Shown: positions 6,301-62,700, counted from the stretch's first letter. The stretch: 64,000 nt of DNA from Macrostomum hystrix (GCA_950097015.1 CATNEN010000033.1:5022001-5086000); one strand, 5' to 3'. Program-made: numbers and translations. Notes: generated by a model not told the origin, from the letters alone.

Positions 6301-6841
6301 CATCGTTCTCCTTCCCCGCCAGCCGCTGCTCCACCCAGGTCTTCCGCTTCCTGCCGTGGCTGGCGGCTGGGACCTCCACAGCCATGCCCAGCAGCACCGC
6401 CTGCAGATTGTAGACGTCGCCAACGCGGAATGCGGCCAGCTCGCGCATGCCACCAGGCCGCTGCGGAGTCCAGGTCAGCGTGAGCATGTACTCGCCCTCG
6501 GCGTTGACAACAAACTCCTGCTCGACGCAGGCGATGCCACACTTTTCGCCGGGCAGGCGGCTGATGCGCACCTCCTGATCGTAGGCGTGCGGATTCTGGA
6601 TGAGCAGCCGCTGAGTGGCCAGGCGGCCCATCGGCACTCGGCCAAAGTCCACCAGCGGCTGCTTGGCGAAGTGGGTCAACACTAACACGTCATGAACATC
6701 GATGGTGGCGCCGGGCACGGAGACACGCGTAGGCGTGGCCACAAACCAGCCGGTGCGGATGGAGCTGGGGGTTCGAGCACAAGTTGGCGCCGACGATGAT
6801 GTCGGAGTGCCGAGAACTGCTTCCAGGCTGTGGTCGCTCAT
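1..6841 (-). CDS. ASPM: Abnormal spindle-like microcephaly-associated protein (ASPM/asp), 5 exons visible, 3' end beyond the window
   Basis: Exons (minus): 6841-5591 (ASH domain '[19 protein letters not shown]', ends [10 protein letters not shown]), 5185-4904 ([25 protein letters not shown]), 2827-2510 ([16 protein letters not shown]), 2400-1967 ([14 protein letters not shown]; CH domain [24 protein letters not shown]), 1456-<1 ([17 protein letters not shown] motifs [29 protein letters not shown]). All junctions are GT-AG with matching phases, provided one extra base at 2527-2531 is removed. Motifs recalled from human/fly ASPM. Confidence 0.95.
1585..1873. repeat. 7/14-bp minisatellite (cccagat/cctagat) in ASPM intron 4
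   Basis: Directly visible tandem array. Confidence 0.95.
2425..2497. repeat. (GACA)n microsatellite in ASPM intron 3
   Basis: Directly visible. Confidence 0.9.
2895..4190. repeat. 25-bp minisatellite (ggaaatgtgggatcagacagaatcc) in ASPM intron 2
   Basis: About 50 degenerate copies with higher-order blocks; explains the repetitive ORFs at 2732-4185. Confidence 0.95.
4273..4888. mobile_element. MITE / non-autonomous DNA transposon with 25-bp TIRs
   Basis: cccgctgggacccaactccgacatt (4273-4297) is the inverted repeat of 4864-4888 with 1 mismatch; 'cc' flanks both ends; internal repeats of ccgactttc; no transposase ORF. Confidence 0.7.
5494..5578 (-). mobile_element. CORE-SINE-like fragment in ASPM intron 1
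   Basis: Minus strand reads ttgtgtcctttaccaagacacttaac...cagttcaccagccgttaaaatggtaccagc, resembling the CORE/MIR domain (tgtgaccttgggcaagtcacttaac...ctgtaaaatgg) as recalled; a similar fragment lies at about 26905-26958. Confidence 0.5.
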
Positions 6842-9602
6842 TGATTCGCTTTAGCTGGCAGTGCACAGCTGGAGAGCTGCAAATTGTAAAGCAAAATCTA
6901 GTTAACAGAGTTTAGTGTTGACTGCTGGCATCCTGACAAGAGAGACTTAACTAAATTTATAACCACAAATTACTGCAAATTACTATACTATGTGTGATTG
7001 CATGACTGTTGTTTATTCAACATTCTGATATTTCTTTTTATAGTGCTATATTTTATTGAATGTGATGCTGATCGCTGCACAAGCAAGTCTCATAATAAGG
7101 TTTTTTGCATTTCGTTATGTTTGTTCTTATCTATAAAAGCTCGACTGCTATAGCTAGATGATAAACAATTAATCAGATGTTCTGTCACAAATTTGATGGT
7201 GTGTAACCATTTTTCTGCTATTTAATATTTAGCAATGTCATATATTTACTTATGTCTTCTCTTTGCTATATAAATATATTACTTAAGTAGCCAACATATT
7301 AAAACTTCTCTTCAAGTCTTCTCTTGTAGTGCACTTTTTTCTTTATCTTACCCCATGTATAATTTAATCTGAAATACTAACTTAAGACTTCCACAAAACT
7401 CAGTGACAGCTTATTTTAGCATTGTTTAAGTTTGAGTCAAGCAATGCCAAACTCAAGAAAAATTTAGTTTGTGACAGCCAATTTCATGACAATAGTTAAT
7501 TTTCATTTAAAGACAAGTGAGGATAAATTAACACTTTATGTATAACAATTAAATTAGCACAAATAACTAGTCTCATGATACTTTTACATCAATGGGTCTC
7601 TGGTTTTGAGAATATAATTTTAAAGCTATAAACAAATACACTATTGCTATAATATTTAAATATTTTAAAATATTTTATTATAAATATATAAAACAATAAC
7701 AGCCTATATATAAAACATACTTTATGCATATTGTTTCCTAAAATAGCATACTAATGATAAATAAACAAGATAAATGCAACACAGATAGCATGTGAGAAGT
7801 GTCTTATATTTGACTCTATAAGTGCAACATAGTTTTGTAAAGCTTATAGGTTTGTTACAATGCTTGATAATTCTCTTATCTTGTTTGTGAGTTTGAAAAT
7901 AGTAAGACATGTTTATTTGTAATTTGTGTGGCCAATGGCTATATTTCATGGTTACTGGAACTGAAAATGCTAAGATAAAGAATAATCATCGAATTAAAGT
8001 AGGCCTAAATATACTTATACATTTAAAAGGAAAAAATGTCTTAGGCCTACTTTTAAACTCAGAATAATAATTTAAACTAATAAATCTATATAGCCTTATA
8101 TGTTATATCAAAAGATAAGCACTATTTACTGCAGTAAGCTAGAAGAGTTTCAGTTGGCATATCCTATGCCTATGGTATTGTTGTGTTACAATCCCCAGTT
8201 TTGCATTATTGTGTTATACAAGCCATACGATCCCTATTGAAATGAATAAACAAAACAATGCAGATCCAGAAGTATTGTTCAAAATGTAATTCAAACAGCC
8301 ATCACCTCAATTCTGAAACATTTCTAATGAAAGCTAAAACATCAACAGCAATTGCAGCAATAGATGAGAAAATCAAGAAGAGGAGCTATATATTCACCTT
8401 TGTGTCACGATCCCTTACTGTTATGAAGCATATGAAATTGGTATGGTAGGGATTGTAAGACAAAGCAGAAAGAGGGTAATACAATCACTTATTGATAGAA
8501 ATGTGTGTAGGGGATCATAAGATAAAAGTGAATATTAGGCCTACTGAAGTTCAAACAAAGTTTAGGCCTATTCATTTCAGATATACATGAAGGGACCTGA
8601 ATAGTGGAGCAGCAAAGTAGGCCTACCTCACAACAGAACTCAGAAAGCGACAGCAAGGACCACTACTGGTACTTAGTACTTTAACTTACTTATTCGGTAA
8701 AACTTACACTTTTGCGAGTAAATACACAGCAGCGAGTTAGCTTGTAGGCCAAAAAGAAAATTTTTTATTATAAAAAATGTCACATCGTTCGAAGTAATTT
8801 TGATAAATCCGAATTTAAACTCGCGGGCCAGCAATTTTTATTACGATCTAACTTGACACATTGGTCACGTTTTAGCATTTCAAAGCCAGAAGCTATTTGC
8901 TCAGTGAGATACTGTAATTAGGCTTTAAGCAGAAAGTCGCCTTGTTTTTTTATGCTTTTAAAAACTCCTTTTAAAAACTCTGGAGCACCCACGCACACAG
9001 TTACTGTACTCAAGGCACACGATCATACAGGTGCATTGTACATCTGCCCTGACTTTCTCAACGAAACAAAGACAACTTAGGATTGAAATACTAGGGCCTA
9101 TATTCTAGAAAAAAACTATTAAGTTTTTTAATTTTTGTAAGTGCGAGTGCTTAATAAATAGTACAAAGTTTTCATGTTTATTATCCATTCGGTTAAGTAT
9201 ATTATCATGGACAAGTACACAACACACTACTATCACATAGGCAACAAATGAGTATAATTTACATTTTACTTCTTGGGACTACTAAATACTATAAACCAGT
9301 ACTATTGGAATTACTATTACTATTACGTATTAGATCTAGTATTACTTTGTTTAAGTATTTAGTAGTCCCTTGTATTAATTATGGCGCCCTTTATATCCGA
9401 TCACTCACTAGAAATTAGTGAATATTAATTTCTGAATTTTGGCTCTGAATTCGAAGCATAATGATTATTATAAAATGCGCATGTCACACATCAGACATCA
9501 CACAGCACTGATAAACTGATAAACACACACAGATGTTAGGTAGCTAGACAGATTAGACCTGGCCCCTGGACAGCTGGACCTAACACTTGGACGGATATGA
9601 GT

Positions 9603-17322: not shown

Positions 17323-18013
17323 ATGGAGACCCAGACCAAAGTCAAGGACCAGGCGGCGGCGGCACCGGCACCGTCGGCTTGCTACTCCGAGAATTTCAAC
17401 CGGGCCGACTTCGCCAACGAGGAGGAGATGTGTGACGTGGTCGAGAGCTTCGAGCAGCTGCACCGCTCGATTCCCTGGCTGGCCAAGGCCGGCGTCAGCT
17501 CCGAGTGCCACCGCGGCCAGCTGCAGATCCTGCAGGCCGCCATCGATTACATCATCGATCTGGAGGAGCAGCTCACCGACCAGCTCACCGGCGACTTCTA
17601 CCGGGCGGCTGCGCTGGCCGCGGCCTCCGCCGCAGTCAGGAGGCCGTTTGCCGACGTCAACTGTGCGGCAGCTTCCTGCCCTGAGCCCATCAGGCAGGCC
17701 TCGCCTTTGTTGTCCTCGTCGATTCTGCCGGCGCAGACCCAGACGCTGAGTGTGAGTGCTGGGATTTGCCTGCCTTCTCTGTTGCCATGGCTGTTGCCAT
17801 GGAGATTGGGACTAAGAAGGCCGAATTCTATGGGACATTGTCGGTGAATAATGAAAGATGAAATACGCCAAATAAGAAACTAGGTGTTGGGATTTGAATC
17901 TACAAAATCACCGGATAATCCTCGATTCTCAACTCTAAACAATGTCCCACCTGCAGGCCCAGATTTCGCTGAGCGAAGGATTATCTGAGGATTACAGTCG
18001 AAAGTCGCATTGA
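17323..18013 (+). CDS. emc: Id / extramacrochaetae-type HLH protein (inhibitor of DNA binding)
   Basis: Exon 17323-17751 (ATG; HLH ..SFEQLHRSIPWL..LQILQAAIDYIIDLEEQL with an acidic rather than basic preceding region), GTGAGT donor; likely exon 17957-18013 (stop); putative 3'UTR intron 18042-18141; AATAAA at ~18344. ILQxxIDYIxDL is the Id/emc helix-2 signature. Confidence 0.8.
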
Positions 18014-22460: not shown

Positions 22461-22868
22461 GTGTTTCACCAGGAAGTGGAAAATGGCTCGCGCCCCTTTC
22501 GCTTTCAATCAAGGGTCGCTAAACGCTGGCTTTGGTAGCTTGTTAAGAGCGTTCGCAAATTATTGAATAACTTTTCGCGATTCAATCTCTTCGACTCCTC
22601 GTGAAGAGTAAATTTGCTAATTGCCAAGCCTGCACCTGGCTGCAGCGAATTTTTTTTGCCCTGAAATTTCTTCTAATGCGTGCAGATAATCAGGTTTTAT
22701 CCGGTTTCAGCGATGGCACGTTGATGCCGACACTCCAAAAGTACCCACTACTCGGCTTGCAAAGGGTATTTATATTGGCCAAGCTGACACAATAAGATAT
22801 CGAGCTCTTGTTGGACCCTAAGCAAACTTTTAAGTACCTTAAGTACCTGCCACAAGGTAGAATCGACC

Positions 22869-23741
22869 ATGGCCCCAGCAGTCGGCTGCACAAGACGCCT
22901 GCTTCAAGTGGCAGCACTGGCGCTGATCCTGGTCGCTGTTGATTCAACTCCGTTGAGAAACGATTACCGGAGAAGCAGCATGGCCTCAAATTCTGATTTG
23001 GACAATAGCTGGACCAGGACAAATGGAAAAATGGTCTGGAGAAATACTGGCAATGCCCTGAACAACGGAGGAAACACCTGGAATACTGCCGCGGGTTCTT
23101 GGAACAACGGAGGAAACACCTGGAATAATGACGTGAACTCTTGGAACAACGGAGGAAACACCTGGAATACTGCCGCGGGTTCTTGGAACAACGGAGGAAA
23201 CACCTGGAATACTGCCGCGGGTTCTTGGAACAACGGAGGAAACACCTGGAATACTGCCGCGGGCTCTTGGAACAACGGAGGAAACACCTGGAATACTGCC
23301 GCGGGTTCTTGGAACAACGGAGGAAACACCTGGAATAATGACGTGAACTCTTGGAACAACGGAGGAAACACCTGGAATACTGCCGCGGGCTCTTGGAACA
23401 ACGGAGGAAACACCTGGAATACTGCCGCGGGTTCTTGGAACAACGGAGGAAACACCTGGAATAATGACGTGAACTCTTGGAACAACGGAGGAAACACCTG
23501 GAATACTGCCGCGGGCTCTTGGAACAACGGAGGAAACACCTGGAATACTGCCGCGGGCTCTTGGAACAACGGAGGAAACACCTGGAATAATGACGTGAAC
23601 TCCTGGAACAACGGCGGAAACACCTGGAACAACGGTAGAAACACCGCCATTAATGGCGGGGGCTACTGGAACATCAAAGGTCGCGCAGGTCGGAGGAGCA
23701 AGGGCCGTGGTCGCTGGAATAAAATCGGCTACTGGTTGTAG
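22869..23741 (+). CDS. Putative secreted Trp/Asn/Gly heptad-repeat protein (290 aa), family unknown
   Basis: ATG; signal-peptide-like MAPAVGCTRRLLQVAALALILVAVDS; 28 heptads of WNNGGNT alternating with WNTAAGS/WNNDVNS; unique basic C-terminus; TATTTATAT at 22767-22775; AATAAA at ~23924. Confidence 0.75.
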   Translation: MAPAVGCTRRLLQVAALALILVAVDSTPLRNDYRRSSMASNSDLDNSWTRTNGKMVWRNTGNALNNGGNTWNTAAGSWNNGGNTWNNDVNSWNNGGNTWNTAAGSWNNGGNTWNTAAGSWNNGGNTWNTAAGSWNNGGNTWNTAAGSWNNGGNTWNNDVNSWNNGGNTWNTAAGSWNNGGNTWNTAAGSWNNGGNTWNNDVNSWNNGGNTWNTAAGSWNNGGNTWNTAAGSWNNGGNTWNNDVNSWNNGGNTWNNGRNTAINGGGYWNIKGRAGRRSKGRGRWNKIGYWL

Positions 23742-24281
23742 CTGTACTAGACGCACACTGCATGAATTTTTCTAGTTATCTTGGATAGATCGAAGATCAC
23801 TTGTCTCATATGAACTACACTTCTTATTTTATTAGCAGTTTCAGTAGTTTGTTTACGCCTCAATTAATTTTTGGATAAATTTAACCTGTTAGACATTATC
23901 ATAGATTATGTACTATAATGTGCAATAAATTTTAGCAAATTTTAGTGGCGCATAGTACTTATGGAGTTTTACACATTGTTTACTATTGGGCATATTTAAA
24001 TACACTAATCATGGCAATTGATTGGTAGCGGTAAATTTGACACTTTTTGTTCGTTACCAACCCAATTTGTTTGAATTTGCATATTTGTCGGAGTTATGAA
24101 ACAGTTGCAGCGATTAAGCAGACTAAAAAGATAAAAAAATGAAGAAGAGAGTCTGGCAAGCCCTGAGATTGCTCTTGAGCTCTTGAGCTCACGGTAGGAC
24201 CGGGTTTAGAGGAGGATCGCTTATCAGCGCGCAGGCAGAGCTAGAGCCAAGGATATTGTCTGCCCTCAGGGCGCAGAGTGC

Positions 24282-24645
24282 GGGGGGTCGGTGGCAGAGC
24301 GGTTCACGCGTTTGCCTCTCGCACCACGGTCCCTGAGTTCGATTCCACGGCGAGGCCACATTTATTTGGGGCGCAGCCGCGTAGAGAAGGCTTGGGGGCT
24401 TGTCGTGCAATTCACGCCCTTGAGAGCCAACCTCCAAGGCACAGTGAAGTGCAAACTGCCTGACGATGAGAAAGTCAGGGCAGATGTATAAACCAGTGTG
24501 AGCGTGTGCCTGCGTACAGTATCTGTGTGCGTGTGTGCTCAGGAGGCAGTGAAATGGGCGGGATTGCCTCCTCGCTGGCTGCGGGTCTAGTGTCACTAAA
24601 TGATGTGCCATTGCCCGCAGCCCTCCTGCAATTATTATTATCATT
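24282..24645 (+). mobile_element. Full-length tRNA-derived SINE with 14-bp target-site duplication
   Basis: A-box-like tggcagagcgg, B-box gagttcgattcc, (att)n tail; agggcgcagagtgc at both 24268-24281 and 24646-24659; homologous copies elsewhere in the window. Confidence 0.85.
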
Positions 24646-25039
24646 AGGGCGCAGAGTGCAGTAATCCTGGCGAACCTCCTTAAAAGTGTTGAGCATACCA
24701 GGCTGCACAGTTGCGAATCAGGAATTAGAAGTTCAGCAGTTCATCACCTTGCTGTAATAGGTTCTCAGAATTGCCATTCAGTGATGGCAGTGCTTATCGA
24801 CACGGTCCCAAAGGGCCAACCCCAAGAGGCTCGGCTCTATGGATGAGGCACGGCCCACAAGCCTGCGCCTGAGCTGGCGTAAACGCCGACAACCTGTTGC
24901 CTCCAGTCCTTTTCTGTTTAACCTGAAGTTTTCAACACGCTGGAGACGAGAAAGGTGCTGACTGTGACGGCCAAAATTCACGCGGCGCAGTCGGGGCAGA
25001 GGACCAAGCTCGCCTGCTACCAGCGGTTCACCTAGCTCG

Positions 25040-25376
25040 GCGGTCTGGTTGCAGGAGTGCTTTGGGCACTGGCACATCACTTGGTGACAGTCGAGCCGCA
25101 GCCAGTGACAGGCGATTCGGCTCCTTCCGCTGACTCCTGAGCATACACTCACACAGGTACTATACACACATGCTCAAGCAGGTGCAGTGTAGATCAGCCC
25201 CGAATTTCTCATCGTCAGGCAGTGAACACTAACTGCGCGTTGGAGGTTGGCCCTTAAGGGTGTAAATTGTAGGACAAGCCCCCAAGCCATCTGGAATGAA
25301 TGTGACTTCAGGGCGGAATCGAGCTCAGGGACCTTGTAGTCATAGACAGAAGCTTCAGGTACCTTGTATCACTCCC
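25040..25376 (-). mobile_element. Diverged copy of the same SINE
   Basis: Minus strand: aaggtccctgagctcgattcc..ggcttgggggcttgtc..ctgcctgacgatgagaaa..ctcaggagtcag..gtcaccaagtgatgtgcc. Confidence 0.8.
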
Positions 25377-25755
25377 TTCATTTTTTCAAACTCGAGGTAA
25401 TCTTAACCCTAACCTTTATTTACCAAACAAAATTCAACAGTTGACAACATTGTCTCGTCGAGTTTAACCCTGGTTCGGTTGAAGCTAGACTTTTTGTTAG
25501 ACTAAAAACGTACGAGTACGTACACTCGACCCACACAAATGACATTAGCGGGTACGAGTAGCGAGACAAATTGGCTATTTCAATATATTTAATAAAAAAG
25601 TAGTGCTCGTACAACCATCAGTGCTACTTTTCTTCAAGACGCACATAGATTTATATTGAAAAATTGTTGGTCTAATGGTTTGCAATGACACTAAAAAGTC
25701 ACTAATGATGTAATTTGTTCTAAAGCATTTCGACTTCTTTCGACGCGCTGTAAGT

Positions 25756-26454
25756 TCACTTGCCTTCATGCTTGTTCCATCGACCAACGTCCTTGTTCCA
25801 TCGACCAACGTCCTTGTTCCATCGACCAACGTCCTTGTTCCATCGACCAACGTCCTTGTTCCATCGACCACCGTCCTTGTTCCATCGACCACCGTCTTTG
25901 TTCCACCGACCGCCGTCATTGTTCCATCGATCGCCGCCCTTGTTCCATCGATCGCCGTCCTTGTTCCATCGATCGCCGTCCTTGTTCCATCGATCGCCGT
26001 CCTTGTTCCATCGACCGCCGTCCTTGTTCCATCGACCAACGTCCTTGTTCCATCGATCACCGTCCTTTTTCCATCGACCGCCGTCCTTTTTCCATCGACC
26101 GCCCTCCTTGTTCTGTCGATCGCCGTCCTTGTTCCATCGATCGCCGTCCTTGTTCCATCGATCGCCGTCCTTGTTCCATCGATCGCCGTCCTTGTTCCAT
26201 CGATCGCCGTCCTTGTTCCATCGATCGCCGTGATGTCTCCAGTTGTCTACCCAATCGTTGTTCCAGCGATCTCCGTGCTTTCGCCAGTCGCTGCCTTTGT
26301 TACCACCTGAGCTCGAGTCGTGGCTGCCGGAGCCCCATTTGCCTGTCAGGCCGTCGGTCTGAGCTGGGTTGGCCGAGACGGCCGCGAGGAAAAGCACAGC
26401 TACCGCCGCTGCTAGAAGCAGAAACTCGTGGGCAGCTCGGGTTGCTGAAGCCAT
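25756..26454 (-). CDS. Putative secreted Trp/Lys/Asp/Arg heptad-repeat protein (232 aa), family unknown
   Basis: ATG; signal-peptide-like MASATRAAHEFLLLAAAVAVLFLAAVSA; about 22 heptads WNKDGDR/WNKDGGR/WNKDVGR; TATTTATAT at 26525-26517; ATTAAA at ~25590 (minus). Confidence 0.75.
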   Translation of the reverse strand: MASATRAAHEFLLLAAAVAVLFLAAVSANPAQTDGLTGKWGSGSHDSSSGGNKGSDWRKHGDRWNNDWVDNWRHHGDRWNKDGDRWNKDGDRWNKDGDRWNKDGDRWNKDGDRQNKEGGRWKKDGGRWKKDGDRWNKDVGRWNKDGGRWNKDGDRWNKDGDRWNKDGDRWNKGGDRWNNDGGRWNKDGGRWNKDGGRWNKDVGRWNKDVGRWNKDVGRWNKDVGRWNKHEGK

Positions 26455-26959
26455 TGCTTTCTGAATCGAGAGAGAACTCCAGGTTGGTCTTGCGAAAAGC
26501 GCTCCGTCGTAGCCGCATATAAATAGTGGCTTTTTTGGCTTGTCCCACTGGGGCCCATCGTGCAGTTCAGCTAATGTCTATTGTTTCAGCCAATTTTTTT
26601 GTTCGGTGAAGTTGAGCGCCCGGGACAAGAAATGACACCCGCGATCTCTCTGCAATCAGGAATATTACGCAATCGGAATAGTAATGCTAGCTTTTGGACG
26701 CGAAAATAAACTGATGGACAACGTGCCTGCGCGCCAGACTTGTCCAGAAATGAGGTTCACTCAGTGTAAATTATGTGCATGTTGCTTTGTACGATATTTA
26801 GTGAGACTAAAGCTGCATTAAACCTAGTCAAGTTGGGCAAGATGTGCAAGCAACCAGAGGCACAGCCGGCGCTTCCAAATGATTTGTACAGCTGTTCAGT
26901 CCATGTACCGGGTCGGCCGCCATTACCCATTTCTCAGCTGGGTGAACTGAAGCAATCAT

Positions 26960-27589: not shown

Positions 27590-30500
27590 ATGCATCTGTG
27601 GCACAGTCGCCTGAGCACTCTAATCTTCTCAGGTACTCTGATCGCAGCCTTCTGGTCGGACATTTCATCCAAGTGCTGCCAGGTGCTCGCGCTCTTCCTG
27701 GCGCTGCTCCTCTTGTCAGCGTCTTCCGCGGGCTGCTGGGCCGACTTCCTGAGCTGCGTCATCCGGGTGAGTTGCTCAGCCCAGCTCAGCCCAGTTGCTC
27801 AGCCCAGCTCACTGTTCTAAATTCAATTGACACTTGACTCTGCAGAAGGCAATTTCATCAGAAATAACAATTGTCTTTGGGAAGGAAATTTTGTTCACAA
27901 TAAAAACGTTACAAGGCACAGTAATTTTAGCAAGGTACAGAAGACATTGCAGAATATTCAGGGAGGTTCTGAAGACTCGGTCAGGCCAGAGACCTCACAA
28001 AAAGTTCAGGAATTAAAAAAAGCTTTATTGTGTTAAGAAGGCTTAGGATGTTCTGGAATGTTTAGAAGGCTCCAATCAAAATATTCAAAGGGTTCAGAAG
28101 GTTCAGAACGTTCAGAATGTTCAGGAGCTTCAGAAGGTTCAGAAGGTTCAGGAAGATTCAGAAGGTTCAGGAGCTTCAGATGGTTCAGAAGGTTCAGAAA
28201 TTTCAAAAGGTTCAAAAGGATTAGAAGGTTCAGGAAGATTCAGAAGGTTCAGAAGGTTCAGAAGGTTCAGAAGGTTCAGAAGGTTCAGAAGGTTCAGAAG
28301 GTTCAGAAGGTTCAGGAAGATTCAGAAGGTTCAGAAGGTTCAGAAGGTTCAGAAGGTTCAGGAAGATTCAGAAGGTTCAGAAGGTTCAGGAAGATTCAGA
28401 AGGTTCAGGAGCTTCAGAAGGTTCAGGAGCTTCAGAAGGTTCAGGAGCTTCAGAAGGTTCAGAAGGTTCAGAAGGTTCAGAAGGTTCAGAAGGTTCAGAA
28501 GTTTCAGAAGGTTCAGAAGGTTCAGAAAGTTCAGAAGGTTCAGAAGGTTCAGAAGGTTCAGAAGGTTCAGGAGCTTCAGAAGGTTCAGGAGGTTTAAAAG
28601 GTTCAGAAGGTTCAGAAGTTCGAAAGGTTTTGAAGGATCAGAAGGTTCAGGAGCTTCAGAAGGTTCAGAAGGTTCAGGAGGTTCAGAAGGTTCAGAAAGT
28701 TCTGCAGCTTTCACCAGCTTCAGATTATTTAGAAATTTTGAGGATCGAAATCGAGGTCAGAAGACTCAGAGGTGCGCGGGTCAGTAAGAAACTCGTTTTT
28801 AAACTGGCTGATTAAAATGAAACGCAAAACCATATTTGAGAACTAATTTTAGAGCATGGTGAGCAAGCGGTGCAGAAGCACTTGGTTGGAGATTTCGACC
28901 AGAAAAGCACCTGACACACGTCCAATCAGGTGTCAAAAGATTGCAATCTCAATCTGCGCCCTGTTGCTGAGGGCTTTCTTTGAATTCGCAGGCGGGACTG
29001 TCCAACCGGTTTTGCCTGTTTGGCCAACCGGTTAAAGGACCAGTTCCGGAAGAGGTCAACAAATTGAATCTTTTCAAATATCTGGCTGTGTATTTGGTAA
29101 TAAATAACTCACAACAGTGGCTGTATCAGGACTGATAAGAGAATTAGGCATTACAATTATGGTCAAGCGTGAGGTCATATGATTTTTTTCTGGCCAGCGA
29201 GAGATCACAAAATAGGCTAATCTGATGTGTGACAACGTTGCACTTATTCGCTTATTTACTCGACAAACAGAATGCGACAAGAGAAACTCACAAGCTTGAC
29301 AATCGCAATTTGGGCAATCGATGGCTGAAATTTAACATAAAGTTGATTGCAAGATTGTTCTAACTCATTCAAAATTTAGAAATAAGCAATTGATCGGGCC
29401 ACAACGATGACATCAAGTCTTGCTGTTTAAAGTTGAAACCACATTCCATGTCCTGTCGGATATTCCGACGTGTCAGATGTTCCAAGCACATTCCATGTCT
29501 TGTCGAATGTTCCAAGCACATTCCATGTCTTGTCGAATGTTCCAAGCACATTCCATGTCTTGTCGAATGTTCCAAGAACATCCCATGTCTTGTCGAATGT
29601 TCCAAGCACATTCCATGTCTTGTCGAATGTTCCAAGCACATTCCATGTCTTGTCGGATGTTCCAAGCACATTCCATATCCCGTCGGATGTTCCAATCCCT
29701 TTGCAGGTTCTCTTAAATGCTTCGATCACATTCCTTGATCTGTCAGTATGTCCATCTTCGCCTTTTCTCAGCCTCGCAGCCCCGTCGAAATTCCCACGCA
29801 GGCCTACAGCCGGCTGCCGCTGCCGCTGAACGCGCTCTCTCGCGCCTGGGGCCGCTGCCACCGCCGTCCGCTGCCACTCGCAGCTCGCGCGCCCCTCTAC
29901 CGGCTGTATAGCCGGCTCTGCCACTGCGACCTGGCCGAGGCCAGCTGCCAGGAGCTGGTCGACTTTGCCACCCTGGCCGAGTTCTTCGCCCGCAGCCTGC
30001 GACCTGGCCTGCGGCCGGTGTGCCCGGCTAGCGAGCTGGTGTCTCCAGCAGATGGCCAAGTGCTCAGTCTGGGTCGGGTGCGGGCCGGACACTTGGAGCA
30101 GGTGAAGGGCATCACCTACAGGCTGCAGGTAAGCGCTGCCTCTAAATACTTCCACTGGGCTGTGTGCAGGCCCTGACCTTCTCTTCGTCAGGAAGGGTTT
30201 GCCCGGCTTGCTATCTCTCGACCATTGTTCCACATTTGGCCTCGCCGTGGGAGAGAACTCAGGAATTTTTTGTGCGACTCGGCCCCCTTTTCACCTCATT
30301 GGGTGCGCCAGGCCTCAGAATGCTTGCTCACAGTGCAAAAAACTCAATTCCAGGATTTTCTCGGCCCTTTGCCAATCGGCGAATTCTCCCAGCAACCGCA
30401 GCAGCCGCATAGCAACCAAGACGCTGACGACCAGGCTAATGACCAGGCCTACCTGGCCAAGTTACGCCGCTTGACCGGCACGCGGCTTTATCATTGCGTA

Positions 30501-31545
30501 ATTTACCTGGCGCCAGGTGATTATCACCGGTTCCACTCGCCCGCTCACTGGCTGGTTCGAGCCAGGCGCCACTTCCCCGGCCGCCTGCTGTCTGTAGCGC
30601 CTCCCGTGGCTGCCACCATCCCCGGCCTGTTCTGCACCAACGAGCGAGCCGTCTTTGACGGCGTCTGGCGCCACGGCTGGCTTTGCATGACCGCCGTCGG
30701 CGCCACCGGGGTCGGCTCTATCAGCGTTACCTGCGACCCGGTGAGTGAGACCACTTTGAGACTGACCGGGTGTCCTTCTTGGGTGTCTACGATTGGTCAT
30801 TCTAGGGCTTTTAGAAGTGGTCATTCTAGGGCTTTTAGAAGTGGTCATTCTAGGGCTTTTAGGAGTGGTCATTCTAGGGCTTTTAGGAGTGGTCATTCTA
30901 GGGCTTTTAGAAGTGGTCATTCTAGGGCTTTTAGGAGTGGTCATTCTAGGGCTTTCAGGGGTGGTCATTTTAGGGCTTATAGGAGTTGTCATTCTAGGGC
31001 TTTTAGAAGAGATCGTTCTATGGTTTTTAAGAAGCGGAAATTTTAGTGTTTTTAGAAGTTGTCATTCAAGGGTGACTTGGTGGTCATCTTGTATGCATGA
31101 ATAGTTTATGTGTAGCCACTGATATTAGCTGCAGCCCTCAACTTTTCCAAGAGCACTTTAGTCTTCCATTTTTTCCTTTGTAATGAACAGATTTCTAGAA
31201 GGTGCTTTTTAAAGGAAATTTGTTTCTAACGGAAAAAAAGGTTTAACGGATCAGTTGTTTTCAACTCAGTAAAATTTATCGCAATTAATCGCAACTCCCA
31301 CCTCTTCCCCCGAAACGCAGGATCTGGCAACCAACCAGGCCGGGCGGGCGGCCGCGCGCAGCGGCTTCGCCGACAGGCGCCTGCGGCCAAGTCCGCGCCT
31401 GGCCAAGGGCCAGCCGTTCGGCCAGTTCAATCTGGGCAGCACAGTTGTGCTGGTGTTTGAGGCGCCGGCAAGTTTTGATTTCACCGCCTCACCGGGGCAG
31501 AGAATCCGAGTAGGGCAAGGACTGGGTCAGAGTGAGGCCGATTGA
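27590..31545 (+). CDS. PISD: Phosphatidylserine decarboxylase proenzyme (PISD/Psd1 type)
   Basis: Exons 27590-27766 (start tentative), 29772-30128 ([27 protein letters not shown]), 30354-30740 ([36 protein letters not shown]), 31321-31545 ([14 protein letters not shown], containing the LGST self-cleavage/pyruvoyl motif). All junctions are phase 0, GT-AG. Confidence 0.95.
28090..28715. repeat. 9-bp minisatellite (ttcagaagg) in PISD intron 1
   Basis: Directly visible. Confidence 0.95.
29445..29695. repeat. 30-bp minisatellite (gtcgaatgttccaagcacattccatgtctt) in PISD intron 1
   Basis: About 8 copies. Confidence 0.92.
30795..31010. repeat. 24-bp minisatellite (ggtcattctagggcttttagaagt) in PISD intron 3
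   Basis: About 9 copies. Confidence 0.92.
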
Positions 31546-37100: not shown

Positions 37101-40100
37101 CATCTCCCCAGATCCCGAGTGTGATCCGCCATCTCCCCAGATCCCGAGTGTGATCCGCCCTCTCCCCAGATCCCGAGTGTGCTCCGCCCTCTCCCCAGAT
37201 CCCGAGTGTGATCCGCCCTCTCCCCAGATCCCGAGTGTGATCCGCCTTCTCCCTTGATCCCGAGTGTGATCCGCCCTCTCCCTTGATCCCGAGTGTGATC
37301 CGCCCTCTCCCTAGATCCCGAGTGTGATCCGCCCTCTCCCCAGATCCCGAGTGTGATCCGCCCTCTCCCCAGATCCCGAGTGTGCTCCGCCCTCTCCCCA
37401 GATCCCGAGTGTGATCCGCCCTCTCCCCAGATCCCGAGTGTGATCCGGCCTCTCCCCAGATCCCGAGTGTGATCCGCCCTCTCCCCAGATAGCTAAATTG
37501 GTTTAATTGATTCCCAGGCTGTTTAAATTCGCAAATTCGCAAGCTTCACTCACAATCTTCGTTGTCCAGATCATCAAGATCCTGTCGCCGAAGTACCTGG
37601 GCGCCACGTCCAGCGAGTCAGTGAAGAAGCGGTGCACCGAGTGCCTGTACGGCTGGTCTCGGGGTCTCTACTCAGAGCCTAAGATTCGAGAGGCCTACGA
37701 GATGCTTAAGAAGCAGGGCATAATCACCAAGGACCCGGTCTACATCGACCAGACACTGCGTTCCAATCCCTATTTGCCATTGAAGAGAGGCAAGGATGCC
37801 GCGATCTTCAATGACGACAAAACTGCTCAGGAAATCAGCCGACTACTGAAGTGAGTGGGACTCCATCATGTGTATGCAGTGCTCATATCCTAATCCTGTC
37901 ATTCCCTGTCTTATCCTCCCAAGATCCAAGCGGCCCGAGGACCTGATGGCGGCCAACCGGCTCATCAAGTCCGTGGTGAAGCAGGACAGCGAGCGCATGG
38001 ACCGGCTTTCCAAACGCTTGGAGGAGCTGGAAACTGTGCGCAGCAATGCCCAGCTGCTCAGCGAGATGCTCAACCACTTCAGACCATCTGAGGCGGCCCA
38101 GAGCGACCTGGAGATCATTCGCGAGCTGCACCGAACCCTCCGTGAGGCCCGACCCCGGCTCTACAGGCTGGCCGGCGAGACGGAGACCACCGACGAGGAG
38201 TCAATGAAGGAGGTCCTGGCTGTCAACGATCTGGCCGCCGAGATTCTGCGTCGATGCGCTGAACTGGTTGGCGAAGACCAGCTGAAGGAGGCGGCTTCGG
38301 CGGCATCAACAACTACACCAGCGGCGGTGCCCGCATCGCCCACAACGACTGCCTCATCGTCTACCTCCCTCGGCAGCGGCCTCCTAATTGGTGACGTGGC
38401 ATTCGACCCATTTGATCCGCTGGGCTATCGACCGCCCACAACTGGCGCCCCCGCTTCCACTGCTGCTGGCGGTAGCATCCTCGACCTCCCGGACCTGCCC
38501 CCCGCCTATTCGGCTGCACCTAGCTCCGCCTCCTCCGTATTTAAGTCCAGCATCCCGATGCCTGTCTCATCGGCCAGCGGAAGCGGCGATATCGACTTGC
38601 TGAGCGATCTGTTCTCGTCAACAGCTTCAGTGGGGCCGTCGACTCAGCGCGTTGGCATCGCTCCTATGGTGCCGATCAAAGGCGGCGGCGGTGTCGTCGG
38701 CGGCACCGGCTCAGCCAAGCCCGCCGCAGCCGTGCCGAACCTGGCGCTGAATCCCAGCAAGCAGTCGTCTGGCACGCAGCTGCAGGCGTCCTCTGCCGCT
38801 GCCGAGAGCGCCGTGTTCAAAGGCTTGGACCAGCTGGGCAAAGACTTTCTCATGCGACAGAGTCCGAAGAAGTCGGCGTCTGCCGCTGCTGCTGATTCGT
38901 CTTCGATCGCTTCATTGCTGTCCGCAGCCAGTAATGGAAAGACTGATGATGGCTTCGCGGCCTCGCGGCCTGCCGCCTCGACCGCCTCTTCAGCGGCCGC
39001 CAGCAACGGCGTGGACAGGTACGCACAGTGTGGACAATCTTTGTACTTTTAATTTATTATACTCAGAAATACACTTGGGTGTGAAGGAGGGTGACAGATA
39101 GGCATGGGAGAAAGACAGTTTGGTATTGGGGAAAGACAGTTTGGTATTGGGGAAAGACAGTTTGGTATTGGGGAAAGACAGTTTGGTATTGGGGAAAGAC
39201 AGTTTGGTATTGGGGAAAGACAGTTTGGTATTGGGGAAAGACAGTTTGGTATTGGGGAAAGACAGTTTGGTATTGGGGAGAAAGACAGTTTGGTATTAGG
39301 GAAAGACAGTTTGGTATTGGGGAAAGACAGATTGGAATGTGAAGAAAGGCAGATTGGAATGTGAAGAAATGCAGATTGGAATGTAAAGAAAGGCAGATTA
39401 GATTGTGAAGAAATGCAGATTGGAATGTAAAGAAAGGCAGATTGGAATGTGAATAAAGACAGTTTGATCTGTGGAGAAAGACAGTTTGGTATGGGGAGAA
39501 AGACAGTATGGTATGGGGAGAAAGACAGATTGGTATGGGGAGAAAGACAGATTGGTATTGGGGAAAGACAGTTTGGTATTGGGGAAAGACAGTTTGGTAT
39601 TGGGGAAAGACAGTTTGGTATTGGGGAAAGACAGTTTGGTATTGGGGAAAGACAGTTTGGTATTGGGGAAAGACAGTTTGGTATTGGGGAAAGACAGTTT
39701 GGTATTGGGGAAAGACAGTTTGGTATGGGGGAAAGACAGTTTGGTATGGGGGAAAGACAGTTTGGTATTGGGGAGAAAGACAGTTTGGTATTAGGGAAAG
39801 ACAGTTTGGTATTGGGGAAAGACAGATTGGAATGTGAAGAAAGGCAGATTGGAATGTGAAGAAATGCAGATTGGAATGTAAAGAAAGGCAGATTAGATTG
39901 TGAAGAAATGCAGATTGGAATGTAAAGAAAGGCAGATTGGAATGTGAATAAAGACAGTTTGATCTGTGGAGAAAGACAGTTTGGTATGGGGAGAAAGACA
40001 GTATGGTATGGGGAGAAAGACAGATTGGTATGGGGAGAAAGACAGATTGGTATGGGGAGAAAGACAGATTGGTATGGGGAGAAAGACAGATTGGTATGGG

Positions 40101-42408
40101 GAGAAAGACAGATTGGTATGGGGAGAAAGACAGATTGGTATGGGGAGAAAGACAGATTGGTATGGGGAGAAAGACAGATTGGTATGGGGAGAAAGACAGA
40201 TTGGTATGGGGTGGAAGACAGTATGGTATGGGGAGAAAGACAGTATGGTATGGGGAGAAAGACAGATTGGTATGGGGTGGAAGACAGATTGGTATGGGGA
40301 GAAAGACAGTTTGGTATGGGGAGAAAGACAGATTGGTATGGGGAGAAAGACAGATTGGTATGGGGAGAAAGACAGATTGGTATGGGGAGAAAGACAGATT
40401 GGTATGGGGAGAAAGACAGTATGGTATGGGGAAAGAAATATCTCAGCTCTGAAGAACCAATGTAGCGAAGTGAAATGTCAGATCAGCATTCCCACTGGCT
40501 TTCGCAGCCGCCTGACCAGCCTACCCCCAATGTCCGTGGCCTCTCTGCGGCCGCATCCGGCCTATTCGCCACAGCCGGTGATTCAAAGCGAGCCGGGCGG
40601 CCCCGGCGCTGGTCACGTGACCGTCATGCTACACTTCGCCCAAACCGCCTGCTCACCAGCGCCCGGTGTTGCCGCACTTCTCTGCGCTGTCGCATCGACG
40701 CTTGGCCAGGTGAGCCTCAGCTGGTCATCACAATGAAGCCTTGGCCATATACCGGTCATAGACTTGATCATAGAAAGGAAGCATTGGTCATATAATGAAG
40801 GATTGCTCACAGAATGAAGTATTGGTCATAGAATGAAGCATTGATCATAGAATGAGGCATAGGTCATAGAAACAAAGTCTGGATCCATTGAACAAAGGGA
40901 TAGAAATGAATTCAGGGTCATAGAAATGAAGCCTTGATCATAGAAAGTGTCCGTAGGCTTGGTTTGGGTTAGTAGCGAATTTAGTTTATTAGTCACGATG
41001 TTTCACGATACACTTGCATATATATATAAGTCGATAGTCAACAGGGCTTAAAAGTCAACAGGTGTTGCGTACATCAATAATCAATATTCAGGCTGCGTAC
41101 ATTGGGTCAGAGTGCGGCTGGCGCGCAGGCCTGCAGATCAACCCACAGTTCACTTGCTCAACACAGTTCACGGTTCAATCATTCAAACCCTGGCACTTCA
41201 TAAAGGAAGCATAATTGATCATAGAAATGAAGTCTGGGTCATAGAAATGAAGTCTGGGTCATAGAAATGAAGTCTGGGTCATAGAAATGAAGTCTGGGTC
41301 ATAGAAATGAAGTCTGGGTCATAGAAATGAAGTCTGGGTCATAGAAATGAAGTCTGGGTCATAGAAATGAAGTCTGGGTCATAGAAATGAAGTCTGGGTC
41401 ATAGAAATGAAGTCTGGGTCATAGAAATGAAGTCTGGGTCATAGAAATGAAGTCTCGGTCATAGAAATGAAGTCTGGGTCATATAAATGAAGTCTGGGTC
41501 ATAGAATTGAAGTCTGGGTCATAGAAATGAAGTCTGGGTCATAGAAATGAAGTCTCGGTCATAGAAATGAAGTCTGGGTCATATAAATGAAGTCTGGGTC
41601 ATAGAAATGAAGTCTGAGTCATAGAAATGAAGTCTGGGTCATAGAAATGAAGTCTGGGTCATAGAAATGAAGTCTGGGTCATAGAAATGAAGTCTGGGTC
41701 ATAGAAATGAAGTCTGGGTCATAGAAATGAAGTCTCGGTCATAGAAATGAAGTCTCGGTCATAGAAATGAAGTCTGGGTCATAGAAATGAAGTCTGGGTC
41801 ATAGAAATGAAGTCTGGGTCATAGAAATGAAGTCTCGGTCATAGAAATGAAGTCTGGGTCATATAAATGAAGTCTGGGTCATAGAATTGAAGTCTGGGTC
41901 ATAGAAATGAAGTCTGGGTCATAGAAATGAAGTCTGGGTCATAGAAATGAAGTCTGGGTCATAGAAATGAAGTCTCGGTCATAGAAATGAAGTCTGGGTC
42001 ATAGAAATGAAGTCTGGGTCATAGAAATGAAGTCTGGGTCATGTTGCAGATATCGTTCCTATGTGCCTGAAGTGTCTATTTCTATCAGTGCCTGAGGCGT
42101 ATTTAGCGTCTGTTTCTAATTTAAATTGCGCATGACAGGCCTGCGAGGACGTGACCCTGACCGTGACCTGCCGGCGCGAGCCCAACTCGGTGTTGACTCA
42201 GGCACCCAGCGGCTTCAGCCTGCCGGCGAGCTCGCCGATGCTGCCTGCCGCCGCGCCTATCACCCAGTGCCTGCTGGTGCTGGACCCGGCCGAGAAGAGC
42301 CTGGCCTTCTCGCTGACCTATAGGCTAGCTGGCGAGGCAGCCGTCCGCACCCAGAAGAGCCTGCCGGTGGTGCTGCCCGATGACCTTCTGGAGACTGATG
42401 CTTCCTGA
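34187..42408 (+). CDS. GGA: GGA (Golgi-localised, gamma-ear-containing, ARF-binding) clathrin adaptor: VHS-GAT-hinge-GAE
   Basis: Exons 34187-34238 (MASAIK..LEMWLN), 36011-36246 (RATDPTN..ELEGPQIALRLLAHKIQSPQE..GKFRFLNE), 37570-37850 (LSPKYLG..IREAYEMLKKQGI), 37924-39018 (SKRPEDLMAANRLIK GAT domain plus S/A/P-rich hinge), 40508-40709 and 42139-42408 (GAE: VMLHFA..APSGFSLPA..ITQCLLVLDP..LTY). Phases are consistent. Confidence 0.93.
36455..37490. repeat. 29-bp minisatellite (agatcccgagtgtgatccgccctctcccc) in GGA intron 2
   Basis: About 35 copies. Confidence 0.95.
39105..40432. repeat. Compound 21/22-bp minisatellite (ggggaaagacagtttggtatt and variants) in GGA intron 4
   Basis: Directly visible; includes a 495-bp-offset block duplication. 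Confidence 0.95.
41215..42042. repeat. 20-bp minisatellite (atagaaatgaagtctgggtc) in GGA intron 5
   Basis: About 41 copies; degenerate related units at 40730-40950. Confidence 0.96.
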
Positions 42409-47124: not shown

Positions 47125-49632
<2,508 letters not shown>

Positions 49633-61797: not shown

Positions 61798-62700
61798 TGT
61801 AACTAAGTCGCTAGAGCGAGAAGCAGAAGGGAACGCAAGAAGGTGAATATATTTGCGAGGGGCTGGGCCTCGCGCACTTGTTAAGTGGGGTACAGAAAAG
61901 TCTATGGCTGCTTAAGCAGCGGCATCGGTCAGAACAGTCTATGGCTGCTTAAGCAGCGGCATCGGTCAACTAACAACAAAGATAGTTTAAGTACGAGTAC
62001 AACATTTCTCCCTGATCTCAAGATCAAAAGAGATTAAGCTTCGTAGCGGACTGGTGCCGACCTCTCGCGACTTGACCGCCGGGGTTCGCCGTTCCGCTCA
62101 ACGGCTCGCTCTACTCCAGGCGGCTGTGGTTGCGAGCCTGGGGCCGGCCGGACGTCAGCAATGTGACGGGGAAGCCCATCGACCTCCACTGTAGCCCCTT
62201 GTCTCTGGCCTGTCACGCGCCCCCTTGGCCACTCGTCGGTACACCTGACTGCCGGCGGCTTGACGAACACTTCCGTTCCGACCGGCAGGGCAGGGTTTGA
62301 CTCCAGTGTCTCAGAGGCCTCGGGGAGAGCCAACATGGGCGGTTTCCAGTCGTAAGTGCTGAGCATTCTGCTGGGCACGCTGCACTCCCGAGTACCATCC
62401 TTCGGAGCCATGTTGTACCAGAATACCATGTCCAGCACGTCCTTGCCGGTTCTGGATGCCATCCGCTTGATCGTCCGATGATTTCGCTCGACTATCCCGT
62501 TGGCCGACGGCCGGTGAGCGCAGCGGAAGAGGAGTTGCACTCCCCATGCTTCGCAGAATGCACGCACCTCGGCAGAGCGGAAGGTCGCCGAGTTGTCCAG
62601 AAGCAGCTGCCAGGGTGGGCCCCGCTCTCGGAAGACTTGCACGAGTGTCCCTATGATCGAAGCTGTCCGCTCGTCTGGGAGTAAATCTTGGCTAACCCAG
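61798..62700 (-). mobile_element. Ty3/Gypsy LTR retrotransposon 3' fragment: integrase C-half, PPT and probable 3' LTR
   Basis: ORF 62642-62034: VFRERGPPWQLLLDNSATF..HRPSANGIVERNHRTIKRM..WYN..VGTEVFVKPP..W..GRV; purine-rich agatcagggagaaa (62018-62005) followed by TGTTG at 62004; candidate LTR end ..TTACA at 61798 (tentative); 33-bp internal duplication within the LTR. Confidence 0.85.

What the first reader, a model, noticed from the sequence alone, without database searches (positions are those of the whole stretch)
22767..26525. Convergent pair of unassigned, intronless, secreted Trp-heptad repeat genes: candidate new secreted structural system
Seen: two tail-to-tail single-exon ORFs. Each has a signal-peptide-like N-terminus followed by x-P (TP / NP), a short W-containing linker, and an array with Trp exactly every 7 residues. 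The shared consensus is W-N-[N/K/T]-[D/G/A]-[G/V/A]-x-x; for example WNNDVNS in gene 1 versus WNKDVGR and WNNDGGR in gene 2, with units starting TGG AAY AAN. Both have an identical TATTTATAT 94 and 63 bp upstream of the ATG, whereas most neighbouring genes are spliced. One protein is neutral and N/G-rich; the other is zwitterionic (K, R, D). Inference: they are paralogous, co-expressed components of a secretion (adhesive, mucus/rhabdite, egg-shell or seminal material) assembling through regularly spaced Trp by stacking or cation-pi interactions. I do not recognise the family.
Basis: partly seen in the sequence, partly recalled or inferred. Interest (0 to 1): 0.82.

Follow-up and report, generated by a model that had tools for sequence, protein, structure and literature searches.

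The report
Paired secreted tryptophan-heptad repeat genes
Two neighbouring, tail-to-tail open reading frames in an animal (reportedly Macrostomum-type flatworm) genome look like real sister genes for small secreted proteins with one tryptophan every seven residues, but they have no known relatives, and neither expression nor function could be tested here.

Summary
ORF g1 (22869-23741 +, 290 aa) and ORF g2 (25756-26454 -, 232 aa) are convergent. Each has a signal-peptide-like start, a linker, and a Trp-every-7 array beginning at residue 57.

The Trp spacing itself is not remarkable. It follows from 42-bp and 21-bp tandem DNA repeats, 24% of this window is tandem arrays, and public protein sets hold hundreds of W-heptad translations of 21-bp minisatellites.

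Several features argue for real, paralogous genes:
- They are the only 2 of 76 ATG-ORFs in the window with a signal-peptide-like N-terminus.
- Their signal-peptide DNA aligns better than codon-shuffled controls (p about 0.004).
- Conservation across unit types follows codon positions.
- Both have a good Kozak context and a TATA-like 9-mer upstream.
- Both have an AT-rich 3' flank with a poly(A) signal about 160-180 nt after the stop.

No Pfam, PDB or sequence relative was found.

Both mature proteins are Cys-free, about 12% Trp and basic.

My best reading is lineage-restricted secreted low-complexity "aromatic sticker" proteins. A two-component structural or adhesive role is untested.

First-reader notes of this scan flag similar W-heptad ORFs elsewhere in the same genome. 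I could not check them.

The parts
22767..22775 (+). TATA-like 9-mer TATTTATAT upstream of g1, 93 nt before the ATG
   Evidence: The identical 9-mer sits in the same orientation upstream of g2. The chance of any shared 9-mer between the two 150-nt upstream stretches is about 0.07.
22869..23741 (+). g1: single-exon ORF of 290 aa including the stop codon. It encodes a secreted-type Trp/Asn/Gly heptad-repeat protein.
   Evidence: The Kozak context is ACCATGG. This frame scores best of six on codon usage in the non-repeat parts.
22869..22946 (+). g1 signal-peptide-like segment, residues 1-26. It has an n-region with RR and a 14-residue hydrophobic core. Cleavage is predicted around residues 23-26 (VDS/TP).
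   Evidence: Heuristic scan. SignalP was not available.
23060..23629 (+). g1 homogenised 42-bp array (two heptads per unit). Heptads start at residue 57 (nt 23037), and degenerate W-containing units plus a basic tail run on to the stop.
   Evidence: All within-type unit variants are synonymous third-position changes (GGT/GGC, TCT/TCC, GGA/GGC).
23924..23929 (+). AATAAA, 182 nt after the g1 stop, inside a 32% GC flank
25588..25593 (-). ATTAAA, 162 nt after the g2 stop, inside a 36% GC flank. A further AATAAA lies at +335.
25756..26454 (-). g2: single-exon ORF of 232 aa including the stop codon. It encodes a secreted-type Trp/Lys/Arg/Asp/Gly heptad-repeat protein.
   Evidence: The Kozak context is GCAATGG. 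This frame scores best of six on codon usage.
25771..26231 (-). g2 homogenised 21-bp array of 22 heptads
26371..26454 (-). g2 signal-peptide-like segment, residues 1-28. Cleavage is predicted around residues 25-28 (VSA/NP).
26517..26525 (-). TATA-like 9-mer TATTTATAT upstream of g2, 62 nt before the ATG

Best explanation
g1 and g2 are two real, paralogous, single-exon genes, apparently restricted to this lineage. Earlier notes of this scan call the genome a Macrostomum-type flatworm; I did not verify that.

Each gene encodes a small secreted protein: a cleavable signal peptide, a linker of about 30 residues, then 22-30 heptads with one Trp each. The mature proteins are about 24-28 kDa, Cys-free, about 12% Trp and basic (pI 10-11).

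The two arrays arose from a shared W-N-x-[D/G]-[G/V]-x-x unit. Each has since been homogenised on its own by unequal exchange.

Inferred, not shown: after ER import the chains are largely disordered polymers in which evenly spaced Trp act as stickers.
- In g1 the spacers are Asn/Gly/Thr/Ser, which would allow pi-pi contacts and Asn hydrogen bonding.
- In g2 the spacers are Lys/Arg/Asp, which would allow cation-pi contacts and salt bridges.
- Such chains could condense in secretory granules and form or modify an extracellular material (gland secretion, coat or glue).

Whether the two proteins act together is unknown.
For: - Only these 2 of 76 ATG-ORFs of 80 aa or more in the window have a signal-peptide-like start.
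- The first heptad begins at residue 57 with WR in both proteins.
- The first 84 coding nt of the two genes align better than codon-shuffled controls (4 of 2000 shuffles reach the score). The promoters and 3' flanks do not align. Substitutions in the hydrophobic core are conservative.
- Across the five unit types of both genes, the first codon positions of codons 1-5 are invariant. Every third position varies except the one in TGG.
- All within-type variants in g1 are synonymous.
- Both genes have an A or G at -3 and a G at +4 around the ATG. CDS GC is 53-57%, the 3' flanks are 32-36% GC, and poly(A) signals lie at +182 and +162.
- A TATA-like 9-mer lies upstream of both.
- The annotated frame scores best of six on codon usage in the non-repeat parts.
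- There is no C-terminal hydrophobic segment, so the products would be soluble.
- A real animal analogue exists: Actinia tenebrosa XP_031555061 has a signal peptide, about 45 WKNDPQA heptads, two SRCR domains and a SUEL lectin domain.
Against: - There is no transcript, peptide or orthologue evidence. The exact proteins are absent from the 15-billion-protein collection and from the gene-position index.
- No relative matches the N-terminal 56 residues.
- The window is 24% tandem arrays, and arrays often keep several frames open (4 of 6 and 5 of 6 here).
- W-heptad translations of 21-bp minisatellites are abundant in public protein sets.
- A W-heptad frame without a signal peptide occurs by chance at 39121-39765.
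- The codon-usage and 9-mer evidence is weak.
- Structure prediction is uninformative: g1 has pLDDT 40. g2 is predicted as a long helix at pLDDT 69 from a single sequence, despite Gly, Asn and Asp in every heptad.
Confidence: 0.6

Rival explanations
1. The two arrays are ordinary non-coding minisatellites in a minisatellite-rich genome. The ORFs, including their N-termini, are chance products and are not translated.
For: - The window holds 36 tandem arrays covering 24% of its length, and about a third have periods divisible by 3, as chance predicts.
- Several frames are open across both arrays.
- The top hits of the exhaustive protein search are spurious W-heptad translations of minisatellites such as WTLDAGR, WTVDGGR and WPLAAGR.
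- The arrays are nearly identical copies, so they are young.
- There is no orthologue and no gene call on record.
Against: - Both arrays are preceded in frame by an ATG with a signal-peptide-like segment, which none of the 74 other ORFs has.
- The two share the same 56-residue offset.
- Their signal-peptide DNA is homologous while the flanks have diverged beyond alignment.
- Conservation follows codon positions.
- The layout is gene-like, with a TATA-like motif, a Kozak context, an AT-rich 3' flank and a poly(A) signal.
Confidence: 0.2
2. The genes are real, but the products are folded or have a specific activity rather than forming a sticky disordered material. Possibilities are:
- a long Trp-striped alpha-helix or helical bundle for g2;
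- a Trp-ladder solenoid for g1;
- a glycan-binding or Ca2+-responsive repeat (the g2 unit N-K-D-G-D resembles the start of an EF-hand loop; this comes from my own knowledge and was not tested);
- a cationic Trp/Arg antimicrobial coat.
For: - AF2 gives g2 helices over residues 55-230 at pLDDT about 75-86.
- In a helix, the i,i+4 pairs D6-K3' and R7-D4' would be salt bridges (read from the sequence).
- Both proteins are basic and Trp-rich.
- Other secreted proteins carry W-N repeats next to lectin or protease domains (P0023 and P0040).
Against: - Every heptad holds Gly plus Asn and Asp, which are poor helix formers.
- Only position a is hydrophobic and position d is Asp, Gly or Ala, so this is not a classical coiled coil.
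- Single-sequence AF2 tends to call charged repeats helical.
- g1 is unfolded in all five models.
- There is no Pfam or PDB match.
Confidence: 0.15
3. g2 (or both) is a prohormone-type precursor that is cut into many identical short peptides.
For: g2 has a signal peptide followed by tandem identical units, each ending in Arg, with another Arg at P8. Another note of this scan reports a tandem aromatic-peptide precursor in the same genome (s1-402476, not checked).
Against: The arrays have no dibasic sites. The g1 units hold no basic residue at all. The released WNKDGD-type peptides would be neutral or acidic, without a consistent amidation Gly. The shared architecture of the two genes argues for a common, non-peptide role.
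Confidence: 0.04

Closest known systems
Actinia tenebrosa uncharacterized protein LOC116291966 (XP_031555061.1)
   Same: It is an animal secreted protein with a signal peptide followed by about 45 heptads with Trp at a fixed position and polar or charged spacers (WKNDPQA). It was found as a repeat-level hit of g2.
   Different: The match covers the repeats only and shows no N-terminal similarity. This protein continues into two SRCR domains and a SUEL lectin domain. g1 and g2 have no folded domain. Homology is not shown.
Mussel Perna viridis foot protein Pvfp-1, a Trp-bearing tandem-repeat adhesive
   Same: It is a secreted tandem-repeat protein in which a regularly recurring Trp takes the sticky role that DOPA plays in other mussels. 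There the Trp is C-mannosylated and 7-hydroxylated (review PMC4275877).
   Different: Pvfp-1 has decapeptide, Pro/Lys-rich repeats and comes from a mollusc. There is no sequence relation. No modification of g1 or g2 is known.
Macrostomum lignano adhesive proteins Mlig-ap1 and Mlig-ap2
   Same: They are lineage-specific, secreted, repeat-rich flatworm proteins without relatives in public databases. They form a two-component system in which a cationic partner provides cohesion (PMC6410801).
   Different: They are giant proteins. Mlig-ap1 has Lys/Arg-rich regions totalling more than 3,600 aa plus EGF-like modules. Mlig-ap2 has 221-255-aa repeats plus vWF, TIL, LDL-receptor and TSP1 domains. The paper's main text does not mention tryptophan (0 occurrences). 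g1 and g2 are 232-290 aa with no domains.
Sticker-and-spacer prion-like low-complexity domains (FUS/hnRNPA1 type)
   Same: They have evenly spaced aromatic residues in polar Gly/Ser/Asn-type spacers, the layout that drives reversible condensation (PMC9748015 and PMC8638251, listed).
   Different: Those are intracellular, use Tyr or Phe, and are not exact tandem repeats. g1 and g2 are secreted, use Trp only, and are near-perfect heptads.
Spurious W-heptad ORFs translated from 21-bp minisatellites (WTLDAGR, WTVDGGR, WPLAAGR types)
   Same: They share the 7-residue Trp period and a W-x-x-D-G-G-R-like unit, and they dominate the hits of g2.
   Different: Most lack a signal peptide or any gene-like context. 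None matches residues 1-56 of g2.

Membership tests
Any curated protein family (Pfam-A) or solved structure | Significant profile or sequence match | tested here: not met
   Pfam gave no family for g1 and only a sub-threshold DUF4337 match (13 bits against a cut-off of 27) for g2. PDB gave nothing below E = 0.1. The ESM Atlas gave no usable hit.
Secreted protein (classical ER signal peptide) | An N-terminal n-region, a hydrophobic core of 10-16 residues and small residues at -3/-1, with no later transmembrane or GPI segment | tested here: met
   A heuristic scan passed both ORFs and none of the 74 other ATG-ORFs. The C-termini are polar. SignalP itself was not available.
Expressed protein-coding gene | Transcript or peptide evidence | not testable with these tools
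The exact products are not on record.
Paralogous pair (common ancestry of g1 and g2) | Similarity beyond the repeat composition | tested here: met
   The signal-peptide-coding 84 nt align with p about 0.004 against codon shuffles. The 56-residue pre-array length and the WR start are identical in both. BLASTP of the N-termini alone is not significant (E = 0.07).
Macrostomum adhesive proteins Mlig-ap1/ap2 | Giant size, Lys/Arg-rich regions or 221-255-aa repeats, and EGF, vWF, TIL or TSP1 domains | tested here: not met
   g1 and g2 are 232-290 aa with no domains. The features of the family are taken from PMC6410801.
Classical heptad coiled coil | Hydrophobic residues at both the a and d positions of the heptad | tested here: not met
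   Only one position is hydrophobic (W). Position d is D, G or A, and every g2 heptad and every second g1 heptad (WNNGGNT) holds Gly-Gly or Asp-Gly. The AF2 helix for g2 has only moderate confidence.
Prohormone or neuropeptide precursor | Repeated peptides flanked by dibasic cleavage sites, often with Gly for amidation | tested here: not met
   The arrays have no KR, RR or KK flanks, and the g1 units lack basic residues.
Sticker-and-spacer phase-separating low-complexity polymer | Evenly spaced aromatic residues in polar or charged low-complexity spacers, and demonstrated condensation | tested here: inconclusive
   The sequence layout is met: 12% Trp at exact 7-residue spacing, with N/G/S/T or K/R/D spacers. 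Phase behaviour cannot be tested with these tools.
Non-coding minisatellite | A tandem array with no codon-structured constraint and no gene signals | tested here: inconclusive
   The arrays are TRF minisatellites. However, they carry codon-position-dependent conservation and gene-like flanks.

The most novel reading that the evidence does not exclude
g1 and g2 belong to a flatworm-specific multigene family of secreted Trp-heptad polymers. Similar ORFs are flagged elsewhere in this genome by unverified notes. In this reading, a neutral-spacer member and a polyampholyte member are packed together in gland granules and form a two-component Trp-based (pi-pi and cation-pi) coacervate or glue. That would be a DOPA-free, Cys-free material chemistry not yet described in animals.
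Probability: 0.15. Interest if true: 0.7.

Novelty: new variant of a known kind. Interest (0 to 1): 0.42.

Why it matters
If they are expressed, these would be among the most regular natural aromatic sticker polymers known: one Trp per seven residues, no Cys and no Tyr-based chemistry. They come as a neutral-spacer and a charged-spacer pair, which would make a compact model (24-28 kDa) for testing how Trp spacing and spacer charge control condensation or adhesion of secreted materials. They could also be a lead to unknown gland products of free-living flatworms.

If they are not expressed, the case is a useful warning. In minisatellite-rich genomes, 21-bp arrays routinely mimic designed-looking heptad proteins.

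Tried and rejected
- **Family and structure searches.** Pfam, PDB sequence search and the ESM Atlas gave nothing.
- **Word-indexed protein search.** Searches with g2, g1 and the g1 N-terminal 77 residues found no relatives.
- **Exhaustive HMMER search with g2.** It returned 816 hits. The 150 listed match only the repeat region, and most are translated minisatellites or unrelated heptad low-complexity proteins. I rejected them as homologues.
- **P0009 (WNKDGCT heptads, 57% identity).** It lies on a metagenome contig with no informative context, so I dropped it.
- **Exact look-ups.** g1, g2 and a neighbouring HLH ORF are not on record, so neither organism nor transcript evidence came from there.
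- **Run finder.** It was closed, so I could not lay reads.
- **tRNA and Rfam scans.** They found nothing in the window.
- **Literature.** Searches for the unit sequences and for Macrostomum Trp-repeat proteins found no description.
- **AF2.** The g1 model was uninformative. I did not run fold searches with the g2 single helix because they would be meaningless.
- **Open reading frame across an array.** I rejected this as evidence, because 4-5 of 6 frames are open.
- **Period divisible by 3.** I rejected this as evidence too, because the window shows no such enrichment.
Full report
**What is there.** The window holds two convergent, uninterrupted ORFs. g1 lies at 22869-23741 (+) and encodes 290 aa. 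g2 lies at 25756-26454 (-) and encodes 232 aa.

g1 reads MAPAVGCTRRLLQVAALALILVAVDS/TP, then a 30-residue linker, then heptads from residue 57. The heptads are WRNTGNA and LNNGGNT, followed by an alternation of WNNGGNT with WNTAAGS or WNNDVNS. The protein ends in degenerate units and a basic tail (…WNIKGRAGRRSKGRGRWNKIGYWL).

g2 reads MASATRAAHEFLLLAAAVAVLFLAAVSA/NP, then a Gly/Ser-rich linker, then heptads that also start at residue 57. These are WRKHGDR and later WNKDGDR, WNKDGGR, WNKDVGR, WKKDGGR and WNNDGGR.

Trp recurs every 7 residues 26 times in a row in g1. In g2 it does so about 22 times, with one W-to-Q unit. TRF reports arrays of 42 bp x 13.6 copies and 21 bp x 22 copies with no indels.

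**What the periodicity is worth.** The exact Trp spacing follows automatically from a 21-bp DNA period that holds one TGG.
- The window has 36 tandem arrays covering 24% of its length. About a third have periods divisible by 3, as chance predicts.
- Arrays are either wholly open or wholly closed in each frame. Four of six frames are open across the g1 array and five of six across the g2 array.
- A 21/22-bp minisatellite at 39093-40436 also reads as W-heptads (WYWGKTV) without any gene-like start.
- The exhaustive HMMER search with g2 returned 816 proteins at E <= 0.001. The 150 listed match only the repeat part (query residues 60 or later). Most are obvious translations of 21-bp minisatellites such as WTLDAGR, WTVDGGR and WPLAAGR, or other heptad low-complexity proteins.

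Neither the Trp-every-7 pattern nor an open frame is therefore evidence of a gene, and those hits are not homologues.

**Evidence that the ORFs are genes and paralogues.**
1. I scored all 76 ATG-ORFs of 80 aa or more in the window for a non-negative net charge before the core, an uncharged 12-residue hydrophobic core and small -3/-1 residues. Only g1 and g2 pass.
2. Both proteins have exactly 56 residues before the first heptad, and that heptad begins WR in both.
3. The first 84 coding nucleotides of the two genes align far better than codon-shuffled versions; 4 of 2000 shuffles reach the score. The linkers, the 150 nt upstream and the 200 nt downstream do not align. Differences in the hydrophobic core are conservative (L/V/A/I/F exchanges). 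This is what an old duplication with selection on a signal peptide should look like.
4. Comparing the five unit types of both genes, the first positions of codons 1-5 are invariant. Every third position varies except the one in TGG. Asn at position 2 is kept through a synonymous AAC/AAT change. Within g1, all variants between copies of one unit type are synonymous.
5. The gene layout fits. The start contexts are ACCATGG and GCAATGG. CDS GC is 53-57%, followed by about 400 nt at 32-36% GC holding AATAAA (+182) and ATTAAA (+162). An identical A/T-only 9-mer, TATTTATAT, lies in the same orientation 93 and 62 nt upstream. This last point is weak. Two 150-nt stretches of this composition share some 9-mer in about 7% of shuffles, and the canonical TATAAA reads on the opposite strand.
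6. A small codon-usage model was trained on three clear exons of the window (ASH-domain, GGA and kinase). It ranks the annotated frame first of six in both N-terminal segments and in the g1 tail. The margins resemble those of two control exons, so this too is weak.

Taken together, I put the chance that these are real genes for secreted proteins at about 0.7-0.75.

**What is missing.** The exact proteins are not in the 15-billion-protein collection or the gene-position index. Word-indexed searches with g2, g1 and the g1 N-terminus found nothing. I did not verify the organism. Neighbouring ORFs show it is an animal: an ASPM-type ASH domain, a GGA GAT domain, a protein kinase and a Tc1-like transposase. 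Earlier notes of this scan call it a Macrostomum-type flatworm. Those notes also list at least three other first-reader sightings of secreted W-heptad ORFs elsewhere in this genome. They are unchecked leads, not support.

**Properties and likely mode of action.**
- *Mature products.* With cleavage near residue 26 (g1) and 28 (g2), the mature proteins are 264 aa (28.5 kDa, pI 10.9, net +8, mostly in the C-terminal tail) and 204 aa (24.3 kDa, pI 9.95, net +14). Both are Cys-free, have a single Pro and are about 12% Trp.
- *Spacers.* The g1 repeat region is almost uncharged and is rich in Asn, Gly, Thr and Ser. g2 is a well-mixed polyampholyte in which about 45% of residues are charged.
- *Structure prediction.* AF2 without an alignment gives no fold for g1 (pLDDT 40). 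It gives long helices for g2 at pLDDT about 70-85. I distrust that helix. Every heptad contains Gly plus Asn and Asp, only one heptad position is hydrophobic, and single-sequence models tend to call charged repeats helical.
- *Best-supported reading (inference).* The chains are secreted, mostly disordered polymers. Evenly spaced Trp act as stickers through pi-pi contacts in g1 and through cation-pi contacts plus salt bridges in g2. This is the sticker-and-spacer layout known from condensate-forming low-complexity domains (PMC9748015, PMC8638251). It also recalls the recurring Trp of the mussel adhesive Pvfp-1 (PMC4275877).
- *Role.* That layout would suit packing in secretory granules and formation or modification of an extracellular material. 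Whether g1 and g2 work together, and in which gland, is open.

**Comparison with known systems.**
- No curated family or solved structure matches.
- The characterised Macrostomum glue proteins Mlig-ap1 and Mlig-ap2 are giant multi-domain proteins, and that paper's main text does not mention tryptophan at all (PMC6410801). Membership is ruled out.
- A classical coiled coil and a prohormone precursor both fail their defining features.
- The closest real-looking analogue is an uncharacterised sea-anemone protein with a signal peptide, about 45 WKNDPQA heptads, SRCR domains and a SUEL lectin domain. This shows that animals do deploy W-heptad arrays extracellularly, but homology is not shown.

**Verdict.** The case is an orphan variant of a known kind, secreted low-complexity tandem-repeat proteins. 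It is moderately interesting, and it stays limited until expression is shown.

Noticed in passing
window 24280-24640 and 25049-25353: Two inverted copies of a roughly 350-nt element fill the space between the two genes. Five inverted-repeat arm pairs of 41-61 nt are 71-85% complementary. One end of the element looks tRNA-like to my eye, but ARAGORN finds no tRNA. It is probably a SINE-type insertion pair.
   Followed up: partly
window 39093-40436: A 21/22-bp minisatellite just after the GGA GAT-domain exon reads as WYWGKTV Trp-heptads in one frame (39121-39270 and 39553-39765), with no start codon or signal peptide. It serves as a natural control showing that W-heptads arise by chance in this genome.
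   Followed up: partly
window 22947-23738 (g1 mature protein): The protein has 75 Asn and 49 Ser/Thr but not a single N-x-S/T glycosylation sequon. About 13 are expected on shuffling, and the minimum in 2000 shuffles was 4. Only three unit types exist, so the effective sample is small.
   Followed up: partly
whole window: 36 tandem arrays cover 24% of the 64 kb, with periods from 4 to 42 bp and many at 95-98% unit identity. GC content swings between 31% and 59% per 2 kb.
   Followed up: no
window 17323-17844 (+): An Id/Emc-like helix-loop-helix ORF (…QILQAAIDYIIDLEEQL…) lies 5 kb upstream of g1. I identified it by eye only, and the exact product is not on record in the gene index.
   Followed up: partly
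window 29427-31046: ORF pieces have a phosphatidylserine-decarboxylase-like motif (…GDYHRFHSP…). They are interrupted or followed by 24-bp and 30-bp arrays that also stay open in frame. I identified the motif from memory and did not test it.
   Followed up: no
window 5546-6841 (-), 37868-39049 (+), 47897-48775 (+), 58209-58952 (-), 62037-62642 (-): Pfam hits in neighbouring ORFs: an ASH domain (ASPM/Hydin type), GGA N-GAT plus GAT, a protein kinase, a Tc1-like DDE_3 transposase with HTH, and a weak integrase-core fragment.
   Followed up: partly
L001 (ENA ERZ27272092 contig k141_839157), gene 6001-7419: A metagenome protein (P0009, 472 aa) carries WNKDGCT heptads that are 57% identical to the g2 array. 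It sits among large genes with no Pfam hits. Its origin is unknown, and the similarity is probably a convergent repeat.
   Followed up: partly
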